The notes beneath the pieces were generated by a model. It had not been told where the DNA came from, searched no databases, and was given only the letters and a program-made list of their open reading frames with translations. This document shows positions 15,771 to 34,648 of a stretch of DNA of 64,000 bases, piece after piece (the stretch's first letter is position 1; the number at the start of each line of letters is the position of its first letter). Location: the sequence record MN563784.1. The stretch is one strand, 5' to 3'. Made by a program: the position numbers and the translations under genes.

Positions 15771-16139
15771 GTGATGCAATGTTTAACACACGTAATGAAG
15801 TTAGTGGCCGTATTAAGTACGTTGTTATACGTATCAAACCCACTAGCTGCATCGTTGGTAGTTGACGAGAATTACTGTAATGGTGTTGCACTTATAGCAC
15901 ATGCCACAGCAGAAGCACGTCAGCGTAAAACACCCATTTTACAATGGGAAGAAAACCTACGATCCCTAAAAGGGTACGGCGTGAAGAACAAAGATAACGT
16001 TCTTTACAATGTTCTCCCAGCAGCAATTAAAGAGGTGCACGTTGTGTATTCACGTAGACAAAGCCCACGTGATGCATACGTTACATCATTTAAAACCTGT
16101 ATGGATAACAACTACGGTAAAGCTGTGGTTGTAAAATAA
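15771..16139 (+). CDS. predicted exported two-cysteine helical protein
   Basis: Signal-like KLVAVLSTLLYVSNPLAA; Cys near both ends of mature region. Confidence 0.7.
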   Translation: MMQCLTHVMKLVAVLSTLLYVSNPLAASLVVDENYCNGVALIAHATAEARQRKTPILQWEENLRSLKGYGVKNKDNVLYNVLPAAIKEVHVVYSRRQSPRDAYVTSFKTCMDNNYGKAVVVK

Positions 16140-24691: not shown

Positions 24692-24747
24692 TAAGTCTTT
24701 TACAAAGTCACCATAAAGTCCTCCCTTCGGGGAGGCTTTATATTTTA

Positions 24748-24790
24748 TTTTTTGTATTCAAACATATTTTAACAGTATATTACTAATGTG
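24748..24790 (+). promoter_or_regulatory. early promoter
   Basis: ttttttgtattcaaacatattttaacag-TATATTAC (24776-83). Confidence 0.8.
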
Positions 24791-27547: not shown

Positions 27548-28204
27548 ATGCTAATGAATGAAATTATCGATATTCTAGAAGGAGGGAAAGAGAATATTCT
27601 CTTAACTAACCATCTAGGTAATGGCAAATATTCCAATGCGGGTAATGCAATGGCTGCATCATATGCCATTGCGGCACATACTGCTGTTGGTCAATTGCGA
27701 GATGGTTCAGGAAAACCTTACTGGCATCATTTATTACAAGTAGCTGAGATGGCGCAATTATTCGACCTATCTCACGCTGCTTATAAAGCAGCATGGTTAC
27801 ATGATGTAATTGAGGATACTGCTGTAACTGCTTCTGATCTAACTAAACTATTCTCAATCCCTGTTGTTAATTTAGTAACTGAACTAACAAATGTAACTTA
27901 CGAAGGTAATCGTAAAACTAGGATTAGTTTACAACATGAAAGACTTTCTCGCATTTCATGGAGTGGTCAATCTCTTAAGTTACTAGATTCCATTTCAAAC
28001 ATGTGGTCGATTGTTAATGATAAGCCTGATTTTGCTGAACTGTATCTGACTGAGAAAGCTCAACTAATCAGTAAGTTAAATAATTGTCACCCCGCTATTA
28101 AAGATCTGGCTATATCTGTTCTCTATGGCAGGTGTACTATGGTTGGTGGGGATGCACTAAAAGAATATAATAAACTATTTTCTGATAATGAAATTGTATG
28201 TTAA
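27548..28204 (+). CDS. RelA/SpoT-type HD hydrolase (small alarmone hydrolase/Mesh1-like)
   Basis: H...GQLRDGSGKPYWHH, AAWLHDVIEDT, LKLLDSISN. Confidence 0.85.
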   Translation: MLMNEIIDILEGGKENILLTNHLGNGKYSNAGNAMAASYAIAAHTAVGQLRDGSGKPYWHHLLQVAEMAQLFDLSHAAYKAAWLHDVIEDTAVTASDLTKLFSIPVVNLVTELTNVTYEGNRKTRISLQHERLSRISWSGQSLKLLDSISNMWSIVNDKPDFAELYLTEKAQLISKLNNCHPAIKDLAISVLYGRCTMVGGDALKEYNKLFSDNEIVC

Positions 28205-28252
28205 AATAATTACTTAATATACACCCTCCCTTCGGGGAGGGTTTTATTTATC

Positions 28253-28300
28253 TTTTTTTGTATTTAAACTATTTAAAAAGCTATATTACAAATATGAATT
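28253..28300 (+). promoter_or_regulatory. early promoter
   Basis: tttttttgtatttaaactatttaaaaagc-TATATTAC (28282-89) after terminator 28223-42. Confidence 0.8.
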
Positions 28301-28322
28301 TAATAACCAAGAGGGCAATACA

Positions 28323-28586
28323 ATGACTGAACGTTTGAAATCCGTATGGTGCGCTTGCAGCTTACTGCGTGAACGCTGGAGACACATCCAAGACATTGCT
28401 GTCGGGGATGAACATCATGTCATAGTAAAAAACGATATGCTGATGGTGTTTCGTGGTCAAGTACCGGTAGGTAGCATGTACCGGGGTGACAGTGACCCAC
28501 TCATCTACGAGGGTGGTGCACTGGAAGAATTTACTAAAGTTGTATTGGATTTAGAATTCAATACTCGTGGTGAAACCAATAGTTAA
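28323..28586 (+). CDS. hypothetical early protein
   Basis: GAGG RBS. Confidence 0.75.
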   Translation: MTERLKSVWCACSLLRERWRHIQDIAVGDEHHVIVKNDMLMVFRGQVPVGSMYRGDSDPLIYEGGALEEFTKVVLDLEFNTRGETNS

Positions 28587-28612
28587 TAAAATTAATTTTG
28601 AGGTAATTCATT

Positions 28613-29020
28613 ATGAAATATGTAATTGTATTTATGTTGTCTATTGTAACTATCACTGCTAACTCGGCTGTCATGTACACTAATCGTGATTCATGCATCG
28701 AGTTTGTAAAACAGGCAGATGAATTGTTTGTAAAAGGTGCATCTGTAACTGAAGTGCAAATGAAGACTTATGAAAGGATTCATTATATCCTTAATAACAC
28801 TAAAGATCTAAAGACCAACCAGTCTAAAGTTGAAGAACTCACTGGTCTATTTTACCTATGGTCTAAGGTAGATAAAATGGCAATTGAGGCAAGTTTGCCA
28901 CGTGCAACAAATGCTGCTAAAGTCTATAAGACCACTCCTGAGAAATTCATCATTGATGGTTATTTCCAGCGTTGTGTAGCGGCAGGTGCGTTTGAAGCAA
29001 AACCACTTACTCTAAAATAA
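28613..29020 (+). CDS. predicted exported two-Cys helical protein
   Basis: MKYVIVFMLSIVTITANS-A; DSC...QRC. Confidence 0.8.
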   Translation: MKYVIVFMLSIVTITANSAVMYTNRDSCIEFVKQADELFVKGASVTEVQMKTYERIHYILNNTKDLKTNQSKVEELTGLFYLWSKVDKMAIEASLPRATNAAKVYKTTPEKFIIDGYFQRCVAAGAFEAKPLTLK

Positions 29021-29032
29021 TGGAGGTACAAC

Positions 29033-29392
29033 ATGCTTAAGAATTGGCTATTATTCCTTTTCCTGCCAATCCTGTCCATTGCATGTCAGCCTGCCCACGC
29101 TGTAGAAGTGGGTATTACTAAGAAATCATGTAATGTGGCAGTAAATCTTTCACAAAAAGCAACTGAGCTTTATGATAAGAACCTATCCCAATTTGAGATA
29201 ATGATGCAGTTAGATATGATCTCTCGTAAGGATATGGATGACTTAGAGTTCTATGCAGGTACCGTATATGCTAAATTAAACTTAGTTGATATTCGCGTAA
29301 ATAAACGAAAAGGATTTACCAATGGAGCTATTCTAGATAGGCTAGCTGAAAACTGTGTTGAAGCAATTGGTACTAAATTTAACTTGGAGTAG
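29033..29392 (+). CDS. predicted exported two-Cys helical protein
   Basis: Signal ending AHA; KSC...ENC. Confidence 0.8.
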   Translation: MLKNWLLFLFLPILSIACQPAHAVEVGITKKSCNVAVNLSQKATELYDKNLSQFEIMMQLDMISRKDMDDLEFYAGTVYAKLNLVDIRVNKRKGFTNGAILDRLAENCVEAIGTKFNLE

Positions 29393-29395
29393 AAT

Positions 29396-30190
29396 ATGGT
29401 TAGTATTTATATTGTCATTATACTCATGGCTATGCTAGCTGCATTGACATGTGGTAATTTGGTAGATAGCTGGGTAAGGCCAGCTATTCTAAAGTGGTTA
29501 AATGATGATGTCGCTATTCATTTCACCAATGCTACCTGGATGGTTGGGGGGATCCCTAATAGTGTTCCAATGCAACTAGGTAAAGCTGTTTGGTTACCCA
29601 AATACGTGGGTGACGGAATACGTCTTTATATCACGGCTGATGAAATAAAATTTGGATGGAATGGTAAAGAAAAAGATGCTTTAGCACGAGCCATTGTTGA
29701 AGTTATCTTTATTGGTAAAAATCCAAATAGTAAACTTCTTGAAGTAAGTATTAAACCTATTTGGTTACACCCTTCTATCCAAAAAGAAAGTTTCTATTTA
29801 ATGTTTGATTGGGAAAAGCTTTATACAAAAAATGAAGAGATGCGTATTTGTTGGAAGACAATACGTCACACTTTTTTCTATGGATTCCTAGGTTTGCTAT
29901 TTGGCGGTAGTGCCAATGCAGATAACCTTGTATTAACTGAACGTGGATGTGACCAATATGAAGCAATGGTGAGAACTATTGCATCTAAAGCTTATATTGG
30001 ATTAGATCCAGTTATGGGTAGGGAATTCATTATTAATGATCCTGATATGTTAAATGCCCGTGAGAAAGCACAACGTAATACCCGTATCATTATCGATATG
30101 GTGGAAACTGGACAAGAACCCAAAGACATTGCATTATGGATGAATACTCAATGTAAACAAGAAGCAGTGTCAAATTTAATCAAACAGTAA
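29396..30190 (+). CDS. TM-anchored protein fused to a second signal-like segment and two-Cys domain
   Basis: N-terminal TM; internal FFYGFLGLLFGGSANA then RGC...TQC. Confidence 0.75.
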   Translation: MVSIYIVIILMAMLAALTCGNLVDSWVRPAILKWLNDDVAIHFTNATWMVGGIPNSVPMQLGKAVWLPKYVGDGIRLYITADEIKFGWNGKEKDALARAIVEVIFIGKNPNSKLLEVSIKPIWLHPSIQKESFYLMFDWEKLYTKNEEMRICWKTIRHTFFYGFLGLLFGGSANADNLVLTERGCDQYEAMVRTIASKAYIGLDPVMGREFIINDPDMLNAREKAQRNTRIIIDMVETGQEPKDIALWMNTQCKQEAVSNLIKQ

Positions 30191-30203
30191 AAAAGGCATA
30201 GAT

Positions 30204-30587
30204 ATGAAAAGAAATTTTGAAGATGATCACGTGGTAATGGCAGTGGAAGTATATGAGAAACTGAAAGAAGCTGCTGCTTATTCATTACACTCTTCTGAAA
30301 TTAGTAAGATCGAACGACATATGCGTAAGTTTAATCGTGTTCAACGCGATAAACATATTGAAAATATGCATATGGAAATGCTTGAGAAACGCGAGGCTAT
30401 TAGAAAAGCAAAATCTTTCTTTTCTCAAAATGCCGGTAAAATTGGTTGCGTAGTAGATAGGCTTGTCAAAGTATGTGAAGTGTATAAAATGGATAAGTCT
30501 ATGGTGGTTGTTGAGTTTCTCCAACATAAATCTAAAATTAAAGTTCCAGTAAATCCTGAAAAAATTACTATTCTTACCATTAAATAA
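30204..30587 (+). CDS. hypothetical protein, paralog of 5240 ORF
   Basis: See 5240. Confidence 0.8.
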   Translation: MKRNFEDDHVVMAVEVYEKLKEAAAYSLHSSEISKIERHMRKFNRVQRDKHIENMHMEMLEKREAIRKAKSFFSQNAGKIGCVVDRLVKVCEVYKMDKSMVVVEFLQHKSKIKVPVNPEKITILTIK

Positions 30588-30604
30588 ATGAAGAAGGATT
30601 TAAA

Positions 30605-31060
30605 ATGAAAAATGTAATTGCAGCAGCTTTCGCTGGTCTCATTGCCATTACCGGTATCATGTTCAATACCGCAATGGCTGAAATCAAGATTGGTAAAAAA
30701 GATGCTCAACTCACTGTGCAGTCGTGTGCAATGGTTGAAACCATTACTAAACAAGCTGTATTTCGAATGAGTGAAGGTCATAGCGCAGATGAAGTTGGTG
30801 TGCTTATGCTCAACAACTCTGCTAAACTCAAAGATGAGTTGGATACCAATAATTGGATTGCGTTAACATTCGTATTCAATAGTCTTAATAAAATCAATAA
30901 TGACCTTAACAGTAAAGAGATCCATGATTATATCCGTAGTCAAGGTTACAATGTGACTACTCCTAATCTGGCAGCTTTTATCAGCGGGTATTATGGCAAT
31001 TACTGCATGAAGCATATTGGTGAGAAATTCACTCACATGGTAATTGTTGAACTCATTTAA
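30605..31060 (+). CDS. predicted exported two-Cys helical protein
   Basis: Signal ending AMA; QSC...NYC. Confidence 0.8.
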   Translation: MKNVIAAAFAGLIAITGIMFNTAMAEIKIGKKDAQLTVQSCAMVETITKQAVFRMSEGHSADEVGVLMLNNSAKLKDELDTNNWIALTFVFNSLNKINNDLNSKEIHDYIRSQGYNVTTPNLAAFISGYYGNYCMKHIGEKFTHMVIVELI

Positions 31061-31092
31061 TTCATATCGAATACTTTCAAAAGGAAAATAGG

Positions 31093-31470
31093 ATGAAATA
31101 CGTCTTCTCGCTCATTATCACTATGGTAGCAATGTCGGTTAATGCACAACCCGTAACCGTGTCATCTTGCTACGTGCTGCACAGCTTGGCAAAGAATATG
31201 GTTCAATTCTACACTAATGGCGGTGAGCCATTGGAGATGTATGCAATACTGCAAGATGAACTATCCATTGCCATAGATAAAAACCAGAGTGATAAGGCAC
31301 TCGCTATTAATATCGCATTGGATAATGTCGATGTAATATACCAAAATCTCACTGATCCCGCACTTAAGCTTTTGGCAAAGAGCGAGGGAAGTGATCTTGG
31401 TGAGATGCTGACTGAAAAACTCAGTAATGGGTGTTTCAATATAGTCGGCGAGGAGTTGTATGATAACTAG
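31093..31470 (+). CDS. predicted exported two-Cys helical protein
   Basis: Signal ending VNA; SSC...NGC. Confidence 0.8.
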   Translation: MKYVFSLIITMVAMSVNAQPVTVSSCYVLHSLAKNMVQFYTNGGEPLEMYAILQDELSIAIDKNQSDKALAINIALDNVDVIYQNLTDPALKLLAKSEGSDLGEMLTEKLSNGCFNIVGEELYDN

Positions 31471-31699
31471 AATCATCCTAATTGTTGCATGGGTATGGGT
31501 AATCTCTCTTATGGGAATGATTACGTATGTTCTTTATGATACGTATCAATTTCGTAAGAAATTAGAAATGCCTGTTGTAGAATGGGAAGATAAGGCGAAG
31601 GACACTCCTGTTAAGAAGTGTCCAGATGAAGTATTATTCGCTGAAGACCCAAAGGATGGCAAACTCAAAATGGGATGCCCTGAGAGTTATAAGAAATAA
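31460..31699 (+). CDS. TM-anchored small protein with two Cys
   Basis: IILIVAWVWVISLMGMITYVLY; GAGGAG RBS. Confidence 0.75.
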   Translation: MITRIILIVAWVWVISLMGMITYVLYDTYQFRKKLEMPVVEWEDKAKDTPVKKCPDEVLFAEDPKDGKLKMGCPESYKK

Positions 31700-31781
31700 T
31701 TAGAGGACCTTCGGGTCCTCTTTTTAACCGACTGGACGGTTAAAACTAGGTGGGATAAATTAAACTATTTGAGGAAATCTA

Positions 31782-31889
31782 ATGCAACTTAGTAATGAAC
31801 TTTTCTATGTGGGTATGGTAGCTGTATCAATGTCAATCGGTATGCTATTTAGCTATATTTATCACACTCATAAGAAAAAATATAAATAA
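31782..31889 (+). CDS. 35-aa membrane peptide (not in ORF track)
   Basis: [35 protein letters not shown]; GAGG RBS; terminator follows. Confidence 0.6.
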
Positions 31890-31992
31890 AGTCATAAACC
31901 CTCTCCCAAAGGAGAGGGCTTTTACATTAAATTTTTTTTGAAATCTATATTACACTAATACAACATTAAACTATTAAATAGGTAATTAAAAA

Positions 31993-34557: not shown

Positions 34558-34601
34558 TAGTTATTATATTGCCCTCCCATTGCGGGAGGGCTTATATTTT
34601 A

Positions 34602-34648
34602 TTTTTTTGTATTTAAAGCATTTTAAACAGTATATTACAAATGTGATA
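34602..34648 (+). promoter_or_regulatory. early promoter
   Basis: ttttttgtatttaaagcattttaaacag-TATATTAC (34631-38)-aaatgtgata. Confidence 0.8.

What the first reader, a model, noticed from the sequence alone, without database searches (positions are those of the whole stretch)
28253..31720. Early operon of paralogous exported disulfide-clamped helical proteins
Seen: downstream of one early promoter, ORFs 28613, 29033, 29396 (C-half), 30605 and 31093, plus the outlier 15771, each have a signal-like N-terminus ending in an AxA-type site, one Cys a few residues into the mature chain, one Cys near the C-terminus, and helical sequence between. They are otherwise highly diverged. Inference: a diversified periplasmic array, for example superinfection exclusion, decoys against envelope-located defences, or control of envelope stress or peptidoglycan enzymes during early infection.
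Basis: partly seen in the sequence, partly recalled or inferred. Interest (0 to 1): 0.68.

Follow-up and report, generated by a model that had tools for sequence, protein, structure and literature searches.

The report
Exported saposin-fold protein family, phiKZ

Summary
The window is a phiKZ-type jumbo phage; the ORFs are gp247, gp248, gp249, gp251, gp252 and gp229. The observed pattern is real in all six: a signal-like N-terminus, one Cys about 8-16 residues into the mature chain, and one Cys 11-18 residues from the C-terminus.

- **Paralogy:** gp248, gp251 and gp252 are paralogs by profile search. gp247 and the C-terminal domain of gp249 are probable diverged members (p about 1e-4). gp229 shows no sequence relation.
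- **Fold:** AlphaFold2 gives mature gp248 a confident model (pLDDT 93.6). Its best solved matches are saposins (Z 8.9, 79 of 81 residues).
- **gp248 is not a plain secreted protein:** it has a conserved lipobox cysteine and is probably a lipoprotein.
- **Distribution:** only nine cluster representatives among 1.84 billion proteins, in Pseudomonas phiKZ-like phages and unassigned metagenome contigs.
- **Operon:** it runs from a phiKZ early-promoter motif to a hairpin.
- **Published data:** the gp248 protein is present at 15 min, is non-toxic on overexpression, and every gene of the operon tolerates transposon insertions.

Function is inferred only. The closest analogue in build is T4 Spackle, an early periplasmic helical protein with one disulfide that blocks superinfection. 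Lipid binding is the main rival. I found no description in the literature searched. This scan has reported the same operon before on other phiKZ-type assemblies, with concordant readings.

The parts
28223..28242 (+). Terminator hairpin closing the upstream (gp246) unit
   Evidence: 8-bp stem followed by a T-run. Conserved in L007.
28253..28289 (+). phiKZ early-promoter-type element: T/A-rich stretch plus TATATTAC at 28282-28289
   Evidence: Near-identical extended motif at 24776 and 34631, and a similar one at five other intergenic sites. Kept directly upstream of gp247 in L007. An RNA-library contig starts at 28305. The literature describes an AT-rich consensus centred near -10 with a T-rich element upstream.
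28323..28586 (+). gp246.1, an 87-aa protein without an export signal; first gene of the operon in this strain
   Evidence: ORF. Absent from relative L007. No family hit.
28613..29020 (+). gp247, a probable diverged family member: signal peptide, Cys28 and Cys121
   Evidence: Family HMM gives 9.2 bits, p 8e-5; 1 of 1000 shuffles reach that score. It is the top non-member hit. hhalign is collinear with both Cys aligned, but E is 0.1. The BFVD model of the likely PA7 ortholog (matched by its 135-aa length only) matches weakly, TM 0.42. dN/dS 0.09.
29033..29392 (+). gp248, the founding family member: lipobox Cys18, Cys33 and Cys108, saposin-like fold
   Evidence: Orthologs in PhiPA3, Phabio, PA1C, Psa21, 201phi2-1 and others. 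AF2 pLDDT 93.6. Saposin A Z 8.9. The Churi protein, 100% identical, is detected at 15 min post-infection and is non-toxic.
29396..30190 (+). gp249: N-terminal hydrophobic helix, a domain of about 130 aa, an internal signal-like segment (residues about 149-175), then a C-terminal family-type domain (29921-30187)
   Evidence: BFVD model of a 264-aa phage protein, taken to be the gp249 ortholog by length only, matches the gp248 model over 85 columns: rmsd 1.7, TM 0.71. The C-domain scores 8.1 bits against the family HMM, p 1.7e-4, 0 of 1000 shuffles. Cys185 and Cys253 are kept in L007.
30204..30587 (+). gp250, a 127-aa protein without an export signal; not a family member
   Evidence: No hydrophobic N-terminus. 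Hits PHROG 18482 only. Fastest-evolving gene of the operon: 59% identity to L007, dN/dS 0.23.
30605..31060 (+). gp251, a family member: signal peptide, Cys41 and Cys134
   Evidence: [quoted passage not shown] PHROG 15284, the gp248 family, E 0.0026. A 151-aa BFVD model, taken to be gp251 by length only, has TM 0.75.
31093..31470 (+). gp252, a family member: signal peptide, Cys26 and Cys114; very acidic (pI 4.2)
   Evidence: HMM hit E 1.9e-3. BLASTP against gp251 gives 7.6e-5. Shared C-terminal C-x4-G motif. A viable transposon insertion has been published.
31460..31699 (+). gp253, a 79-aa protein with one N-terminal transmembrane segment and two Cys; last gene before the hairpin
   Evidence: ORF. 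96% identical in L007, the most conserved gene of the operon. Confined to phiKZ-type phages.
31702..31726 (+). Hairpin plus TTTT, the likely operon terminator
   Evidence: 8-bp stem. An RNA contig of run X4 ends at 31726, and the Nanopore run has almost no coverage from 31644 to 31931.
   Evidence: Orthologs at 39-55% identity in PhiPA3-like phages, Phabio and 201phi2-1, with both Cys invariant. No sequence relation to the family: hhalign E 0.08-0.11, HMM -1.4 bits, 973 of 1000 shuffles as good. A 121-aa PS119XW model in BFVD (TM 0.79) may be its ortholog. This is unproven.

Best explanation
**What it is.** This is one early transcription unit of a phiKZ-type phage. Seven of its nine small products (counting gp253.1, which lies just past the first hairpin) carry export or membrane signals. 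Four or five of them belong to one phage-specific family. A family member has a Sec-type signal peptide, or in gp248 a lipoprotein signal. The mature part is about 90-125 residues: a short strand, four to five helices, then a short strand. One cysteine pair ties the start of helix 1 to the end of the last helix. The fold resembles a closed saposin.

**Proposed mechanism.** Each step below is inferred, except early presence of the gp248 protein.
1. The virion RNA polymerase transcribes the operon within minutes of infection.
2. The proteins cross the inner membrane by Sec.
3. Host DsbA closes the disulfide.
4. gp248 is acylated and sorted to the inner leaflet of the outer membrane. The others stay soluble in the periplasm or, for gp249, tethered to the inner membrane.
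5. There they act as stable binding modules that alter the envelope of the already infected cell.

**Most likely role.** Excluding or blunting later-arriving phages, in the manner of T4 Spackle, with each paralog addressing a different target.

**Odds.**
- Exported single-disulfide family acting in the envelope: about 0.85.
- Saposin-like fold: about 0.75.
- Exclusion of secondary infection as the role: about 0.35.
For: - **Identity and operon:**. RNA-library contigs span 28305-31901 or end at 31726.
- **Homology:** the gp248-ortholog HMM, built without signal peptides, finds gp251, gp252 and Psa21 and PA1C paralogs. gp247 and the gp249 C-domain beat shuffles.
- **Conservation:** both Cys and the motifs T-x2-S-C and C-x4-G are invariant in 12 sequences. 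Purifying selection, dN/dS 0.03-0.16.
- **Fold:** pLDDT 93.6, pTM 0.83.
  - Foldseek's top PDB hits are saposin A, saposin C and Na-SLP-1.
  - An independent aligner puts caenopore-5 (Z 7.8) and Ac-SLP-1 (Z 6.7) on top of 48,161 chains.
  - The second look gives saposin A Z 8.9, the prophytepsin saposin insert Z 8.0 and saposin C Z 6.8, with unrelated rows at 6.4 or less.
- **Lipobox:** the Cys is invariant in six gp248 orthologs, and present in 201phi2-1.
- **Early protein, non-toxic:**. **Dispensable:**
- **Analogue:** Spackle is early, periplasmic, 75 aa, five helices, with a Cys29-Cys81 disulfide.
Against: - No signal-peptide predictor, fractionation data or localisation data were available, so export is unproven.
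- Saposin Z-scores of 7-9 are in the range the tool calls middling for helical proteins.
- The family has one disulfide, not the three of saposins, and no sequence relation to any solved protein.
- Spackle did not appear among the listed fold or sequence hits, so the resemblance is in build only.
- No target is known. The one binding test I tried could not be run.
- Dispensability fits many accessory roles.
- P0015 and P0016 lack the lipobox Cys, so lipidation is not universal in the gp248 clade.
Confidence: 0.4

Rival explanations
1. Lipid handling, as in true saposins. The proteins bind or extract phospholipid, lipid A or lipoprotein acyl chains in the periplasm. In this way they remodel the outer membrane, for example by masking or shedding the receptor, changing vesiculation, or supplying membrane for early infection structures.
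For: Saposin-like proteins are the best fold matches by two aligners. The proteins are acidic or near neutral like saposins, not cationic like lytic relatives. Overexpressed gp248 is not toxic. One member is itself membrane-anchored.
Against: Fold similarity is moderate and a shared fold shows no function. Only one of three saposin disulfides is present. There is no Pfam SapB match. The model is a closed bundle, and no lipid test was possible.
Confidence: 0.25
2. Shields against envelope-acting attack. The paralogs are periplasmic inhibitors of host or competitor enzymes, such as peptidoglycan hydrolases delivered by type VI secretion, pyocins or host autolysins. They keep the infected cell intact until phage lysis.
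For: Several diverged copies, early timing, dispensability in pure laboratory culture, and a small stable disulfide-bonded binding-module build. Periplasmic location matches where such enzymes act.
Against: No similarity to any known immunity or inhibitor family. No partner has been identified.
Confidence: 0.15
3. Lysis timing. One or more members act as periplasmic sensors or antiholins for a lysis-inhibition response, as T4 RI does.
For: Slower lysis at high multiplicity has been reported for phiKZ, and a lysis-inhibition system was suggested. T4 RI is also an early, secreted small protein (my knowledge).
Against: The phiKZ holin is described as having its large soluble domain in the cytoplasm, with a cytoplasmic regulator gp143. 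The lysis cassette gp141-144 lies far from this operon.
Confidence: 0.07
4. Not exported. The hydrophobic N-termini are membrane anchors or chance features, and the proteins act at the inner membrane or in the cytoplasm.
For: No experimental localisation exists. The gp251 hydrophobic stretch is long, about 17 residues. gp249 clearly has membrane segments.
Against: Short h-regions of 11-13 residues are followed by small-x-small sites in every member, and these are kept across orthologs whose sequence otherwise drifts. There are exactly two Cys, conserved and placed to bridge the bundle ends, which makes sense only in an oxidising compartment. The gp248 clade has a lipobox.
Confidence: 0.07

Closest known systems
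T4 Spackle (gp61.3), the periplasmic superinfection-exclusion protein
   Same: Early phage gene. Cleaved signal peptide. Small all-helical mature protein with five helices. A single disulfide joins a Cys a few residues into the mature chain to a Cys near the C-terminus. Dispensable accessory function.
   Different: No sequence or listed fold match. The phiKZ proteins are longer, form a multi-copy family, have terminal strands, and include a lipoprotein and a membrane-fused version. No lysozyme binding has been shown.
Saposin-like proteins (saposins A and C, caenopore-5, hookworm SLP-1, plant swaposin insert)
   Same: Compact four-to-five-helix bundle of about 80 residues, closed by a disulfide between the first and last helices. 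Best structural matches: Z 8.9, rmsd 2.4, 79 of 81 residues.
   Different: One disulfide instead of three. Extra N- and C-terminal strands. No sequence relation. Bacterial periplasm and phage origin. Lipid binding untested.
Phage outer-membrane lipoproteins that block reinfection (T5 Llp, Cor of T1 and phi80)
   Same: gp248 has an early-expressed lipoprotein-type signal, and its residue after the Cys (Gln) fits outer-membrane sorting (my knowledge of Lol sorting rules).
   Different: No homology was tested or known. Llp and Cor act by binding FhuA. The phiKZ receptor and any gp248 target are not established here.

Membership tests
Saposin-like protein (SAPLIP) superfamily | Four-to-five-helix saposin fold | tested here: met
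   For the gp248 model: saposin A Z 8.9 (79 of 81 aligned, rmsd 2.4), swaposin Z 8.0, saposin C Z 6.8, caenopore-5 Z 7.8. Unrelated rows score 6.4 or less in the second look. Foldseek TM is 0.60-0.69, but E is only 0.55.
Saposin-like protein (SAPLIP) superfamily | Six conserved cysteines forming three disulfides | tested here: not met
   Only two Cys in the mature domain of every member. By the aligned ranges they lie where the outer saposin disulfide lies (inference).
Saposin-like protein (SAPLIP) superfamily | Sequence match to the Pfam saposin domains | tested here: not met
   No Pfam hit at E up to 1. No solved relative by profile search at E up to 10.
Saposin-like protein (SAPLIP) superfamily | Lipid or membrane binding | not testable with these tools
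   Needs liposome, LPS or native mass-spectrometry assays.
T4 Spackle family | Sequence or fold similarity to Spackle (6X6O) | tested here: not met
   Not among PDB profile hits, nor among the 50 best rows of three fold searches. Lower-ranked similarity is not excluded.
T4 Spackle family | Binds and inhibits the tail-associated peptidoglycan hydrolase | not testable with these tools
Bacterial lipoproteins (gp248 only) | Lipobox ending in Cys at the end of the h-region | tested here: met
   By phage: phiKZ LSIAC; PhiPA3 and Phabio FVGC; PA1C FTGC; 201phi2-1 LISC. The Cys is invariant in six orthologs. Psa21 (MTMC) fits poorly, and P0015 and P0016 lack it.
Bacterial lipoproteins (gp248 only) | Acylation and signal peptidase II cleavage | not testable with these tools
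   Needs globomycin sensitivity or palmitate labelling.
Spanins | Adjacent inner-membrane and lipoprotein pair required for lysis, expressed late | tested here: not met
   The phiKZ spanins are gp141 and gp141.1 in the lysis cassette, shown by complementation. The present operon has an early-type promoter, and its genes tolerate insertions.
phiKZ early transcription units | AT-rich conserved element near -10 with T-rich upstream region, read by the virion RNA polymerase | tested here: met
   The motif is at 28253-28289 and is shared with seven other intergenic sites in the window. It matches the published description. The start site itself was not mapped here: an RNA contig begins at 28305, but contigs cannot prove a start.

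The most novel reading that the evidence does not exclude
Nucleus-forming jumbo phages of Pseudomonas run an unrecognised periplasmic programme. This is a diversifying set of saposin-fold proteins, one of them lipid-anchored. They bind envelope lipids or incoming phage and host envelope enzymes, and make the infected cell refractory to rivals. It would be the first saposin-type system acting in a bacterial periplasm, and a new class of superinfection-exclusion or envelope-remodelling factors.
Probability: 0.3. Interest if true: 0.75.

Novelty: new variant of a known kind. Interest (0 to 1): 0.58.

Why it matters
Work on phiKZ-like phages has centred on the phage nucleus, transcription and cytoplasmic defence evasion. 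A 2025 review of nucleus-forming phages does not contain the words periplasm, receptor or envelope.

This operon shows that the phage invests one of its first transcripts largely in proteins aimed at the cell envelope. If they exclude other phages or change the outer membrane, that bears on phage-cocktail design against Pseudomonas aeruginosa. It also bears on how jumbo phages compete.

A saposin-type fold working in the bacterial periplasm would also be a new setting for that fold. Transposon mutants in every gene already exist, so the question can be tested directly.

Tried and rejected
- **Family libraries:** Pfam, NCBIfam, PADLOC and PDB sequence searches gave nothing for any of the nine operon proteins or gp229. 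PHROGs puts each protein in its own family of unknown function.
- **Word-based protein searches:** these found only near-identical proteins for gp251, and homologs at 49-96% identity for gp229.
- **ESM Atlas:** two calls gave unnamed clusters and no models.
- **IMG/VR scans:** they returned only PA7 and PhiPA3 themselves. The alignment query had no usable conserved stretch.
- **Pairwise BLASTP among the paralogs:** mostly noise, apart from gp251 against gp252.
- **hhalign of the family against gp247, the gp249 C-domain and gp229:** not significant.
- **Spanin reading:** rejected, because the lysis cassette is gp141-144.
- **Internal start for the gp249 C-domain (ATG at 29840):** considered, but the Shine-Dalgarno-like GAAGAG abuts the ATG, so support is weak.
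- **Complex prediction of gp248 with the gp181 hydrolase domain:** I did not pursue it by other means.
- **Second structure prediction (gp247, then gp229):** The folds of gp247, gp229, gp251 and gp252 were therefore not modelled here.
- **Whole genome:** not held.
- **RNA runs:** kept only as contigs, so timing and exact transcript ends could not be read.
- **Record annotations:** phage U5 labels gp247-249 as MazF, DNA methylase and methyltransferase. No search supports these names, and I disregard them.
Full report
**Identity of the locus.** The flagged stretch is 100% identical to Pseudomonas phage vB_PA32_GUMS and essentially identical to phiKZ and 45 other phiKZ-type records. In phiKZ numbering the ORFs are:

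| ORF start | Gene |
|---|---|
| 28323 | gp246.1 |
| 28613 | gp247 |
| 29033 | gp248 |
| 29396 | gp249 |
| 30204 | gp250 |
| 30605 | gp251 |
| 31093 | gp252 |
| 31460 | gp253 |

All are annotated as hypothetical. The outlier at 15771 is PHIKZ229.

**The observation.** Translations and a simple signal-peptide heuristic confirm the pattern. Each of gp247, gp248, gp251, gp252, gp229 and the C-half of gp249 has four features:
- a short positively charged start;
- an 11-17-residue hydrophobic stretch;
- a small-x-small site;
- one Cys 8-16 residues further on, and one Cys 11-18 residues from the C-terminus.

Two refinements:
- **gp248 has a third Cys.** Cys18 lies at the end of the hydrophobic stretch in a lipobox-like context. 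It is invariant in six orthologs from phiKZ to Psa21, and 201phi2-1 has a canonical LISC.
- **gp249 is a composite.** It has an N-terminal hydrophobic helix and a domain of about 130 residues. Then comes an internal segment that looks like a complete signal peptide, with basic residues, a hydrophobic core and ANA|D, followed by the family-type domain.

By the positive-inside rule (inference), the C-domain would face the periplasm.

**Are they paralogs?** Pairwise BLASTP is nearly blank, and each protein sits in its own PHROG. Profiles settle part of the question.
- **First profile.** I built an HMM from six gp248 orthologs with the signal peptides removed, and searched 482 ORFs. It finds:
  - gp251, E 4.6e-4, matching both the N-terminal and the C-terminal motif;
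  - gp252, E 1.9e-3;
  - their orthologs in a relative with about 80% identity;
  - a second Psa21 protein.
- **Twelve-sequence alignment.** The invariant positions are T-x2-S-C at the start and C-x4-G near the end.
- **Fifteen-member profile**:

| Protein | Score (bits) | HMMER p | Shuffles reaching the score |
|---|---|---|---|
| gp247 | 9.2 | 8e-5 | 1 of 1000 |
| gp249 C-domain | 8.1 | 1.7e-4 | 0 of 1000 |
| Four neighbouring non-family proteins | -1.4 to 1.8 | 0.016-0.16 | 90-428 of 1000 |
| gp229 | -1.4 | 0.17 | 973 of 1000 |

hhalign is non-significant for gp247, the gp249 C-domain and gp229.

I therefore count gp248, gp251 and gp252 as shown paralogs. gp247 and the gp249 C-domain are probable members. 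gp229 is a separate family with a convergent or very remote layout. gp229 is more widely conserved, at 39-55% identity in PhiPA3-like phages, Phabio and 201phi2-1, with both Cys invariant.

**Real genes.** Against the relative L007, the family genes show dN/dS of 0.03-0.16 with saturated synonymous change. All Cys are kept.

**Distribution.** A profile search of 1.84 billion representative proteins returned nine hits. These are the three phiKZ paralogs, one fragment, and five more distant proteins. One of the five lies on a 62-kb metagenomic contig that carries phiKZ-type capsid genes. tblastn and whole-record scans find:
- one gp248-type gene in PhiPA3, Phabio and 201phi2-1;
- two to three family genes in PA1C, phiHQ, PS119XW and Psa21;
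- the largest set in phiKZ itself.

The gp248-type gene keeps its place just downstream of the HD-domain gene gp246 in most of these phages.

**Fold.** AlphaFold2 on the mature gp248 domain with the 12-row alignment gave pLDDT 93.6 and pTM 0.83. The model has a strand at residues 2-4, helices at 7-25, 30-43, 48-59, 61-69 and 74-87, and a strand at 92-94. The two Cys sit in the first and the last helix.

Matches to solved structures:
- Foldseek's best hits are saposin A, Na-SLP-1 and saposin C (TM 0.5-0.69, E about 0.6).
- An independent all-against-48,161-chain alignment puts caenopore-5 first (Z 7.8, 75 of 81 residues, rmsd 2.5) and Ac-SLP-1 third.
- The second look gives saposin A Z 8.9 (79 of 81, rmsd 2.4), the saposin insert of prophytepsin Z 8.0, saposin A again Z 7.9, and saposin C Z 6.8. 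Unrelated rows follow at 6.4 or less.

These Z-values are moderate for helical proteins. But three searches agree, the matches cover whole domains, and the disulfide lies where the outer saposin disulfide lies. That last point is an inference from the aligned ranges.

Matches to predicted viral structures:
- The model matches the family members of PhiPA3, Psa21, 201phi2-1 and Phabio.
- It matches a 151-aa protein, taken to be gp251 by length only.
- It matches a 264-aa protein, taken to be gp249 by length only, over 85 columns at rmsd 1.7. This is the structural support for the gp249 C-domain.
- The model of the likely PA7 gp247 ortholog (135 aa, matched by length only) matches poorly, with TM 0.42.
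- A 121-aa PS119XW model with TM 0.79 may be the gp229 ortholog, which has that length. I could not confirm this.

**Operon and timing.**
- A terminator hairpin at 28223-28242 closes the gp246 unit.
- It is followed by a T/A-rich stretch and TATATTAC at 28282-28289.
- Eight of the twelve plus-strand copies of this octamer in the window are intergenic, follow a hairpin or T-run, and share flanks. Those at 24776, 28282 and 34631 are almost identical over about 40 bases.
- This matches the published description of phiKZ early promoters.
- L007 keeps the element but lacks gp246.1.
- After gp253 comes a hairpin at 31702-31721 with TTTT. Next is a 35-codon membrane peptide, gp253.1, then a second terminator at 31899-31918, then the next TATATTAC at 31946.
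- In RNA libraries, one contig spans 28305-31901 and another ends at 31726. The Nanopore run has almost no coverage from 31644 to 31931 and a new contig from 31960. Contigs cannot prove starts, ends or timing.

**Published experiments.**
- **Early and abundant:** the Churi protein identical to gp248 was one of 19 non-virion proteins detected at 15 min in both infection formats.
- **Not toxic:** its overexpression did not inhibit PAO1.
- **Dispensable:** a transposon-sequencing preprint lists 4-33 independent insertions in every gene from PHIKZ246.1 to PHIKZ253.1. It isolated a viable orf252 insertion mutant, and it places the region in a large block of non-essential genes.

**What it does.** Shown or well supported:
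- an early unit;
- a phage-specific family under purifying selection;
- export-type signals;
- one conserved Cys pair;
- a saposin-like bundle;
- early presence, lack of toxicity and dispensability.

Inferred: Sec export, DsbA oxidation, lipidation and outer-membrane sorting of gp248, and action in the envelope.

The closest known analogue in build and timing is T4 Spackle. It is an early periplasmic protein of 75 residues with five helices and a Cys29-Cys81 disulfide. It inhibits the tail lysozyme of superinfecting phages. It shares no detectable sequence or listed fold similarity with this family.

I rank the readings as follows:

| Reading | Probability |
|---|---|
| Spackle-like exclusion or blunting of later-arriving phages | about 0.35 |
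| Saposin-like lipid handling | 0.25 |
| Protection against envelope-acting enzymes of the host or competitors | 0.15 |
| Lysis timing | 0.07 |
| Non-export | 0.07 |

Spanin function is excluded by the published lysis cassette gp141-144.

**Novelty.** I found no paper describing these proteins beyond table entries. A recent review of nucleus-forming phages does not mention the periplasm or the envelope.

Within this scan the same operon has been reported at least seven times on other phiKZ-type assemblies. The follow-up readings there were saposin-like fold, Spackle-like build, early and dispensable. These agree with what I reached independently before looking. One further note reports a similar four-copy array in an Aeromonas nucleus-forming phage, which I did not test.

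Noticed in passing
window 29840-29920 (gp249 residues about 149-175): Inside gp249 an in-frame ATG opens a stretch that reads like a complete signal peptide (MRICWKTIRH, hydrophobic core, ANA|D), just before the family-type domain. It is conserved in L007. This suggests that an exported paralog became fused to an upstream membrane protein, or that an internal start is used. The Shine-Dalgarno-like GAAGAG abuts the ATG, so the internal start is weakly supported.
   Followed up: partly
window 28323-28586; L007 1861-1994: gp246.1 is absent from the roughly 80%-identical relative, where the early promoter sits directly before gp247. It is a strain-variable first gene of the operon.
   Followed up: partly
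window 31460-31699: gp253 has one transmembrane segment and two Cys in a charged tail. It is 96% identical between the window and L007, whereas its neighbours are 59-85% identical. It is the most constrained gene of the operon and is confined to phiKZ-type phages.
   Followed up: partly
window 31783-31890: A 35-codon ORF (gp253.1) encoding a single hydrophobic helix with a basic tail sits between two terminators. RNA contigs of one run read through to it. It carries many transposon insertions in the published screen.
   Followed up: no
window 24731-24783, 28237-28289, 34586-34638: Three early-promoter-type elements are nearly identical over about 40 bases (T-run, GTATTTAAA, then TATATTAC and AAATGTG-like). 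This is a tighter subclass than the other TATATTAC sites in the window.
   Followed up: no
window 27548-28204 with L003, L006, L022, L023: The HD-domain phosphohydrolase gp246 and the gp248-type lipoprotein gene stay neighbours, directly or one gene apart, in PhiPA3, PA1C, phiHQ and 201phi2-1. In phiKZ a terminator and a promoter lie between them.
   Followed up: no
window 15771-15860 (gp229 N-terminus): The residues before the hydrophobic core of gp229 (MQCLTHVM) are almost invariant across orthologs that are only 40-55% identical overall. This is unusual for the n-region of a signal peptide.
   Followed up: no
L002 (phage U5 record) 1361-2938: The GenBank record of phage U5 names the gp247, gp248 and gp249 orthologs MazF toxin, DNA methylase and methyltransferase. 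No family search supports any of these names.
   Followed up: yes
window 30189: All four RNA runs read G where the window has A. The change lies in the gp249 stop codon (TAA to TGA), so it is a silent strain difference.
   Followed up: no
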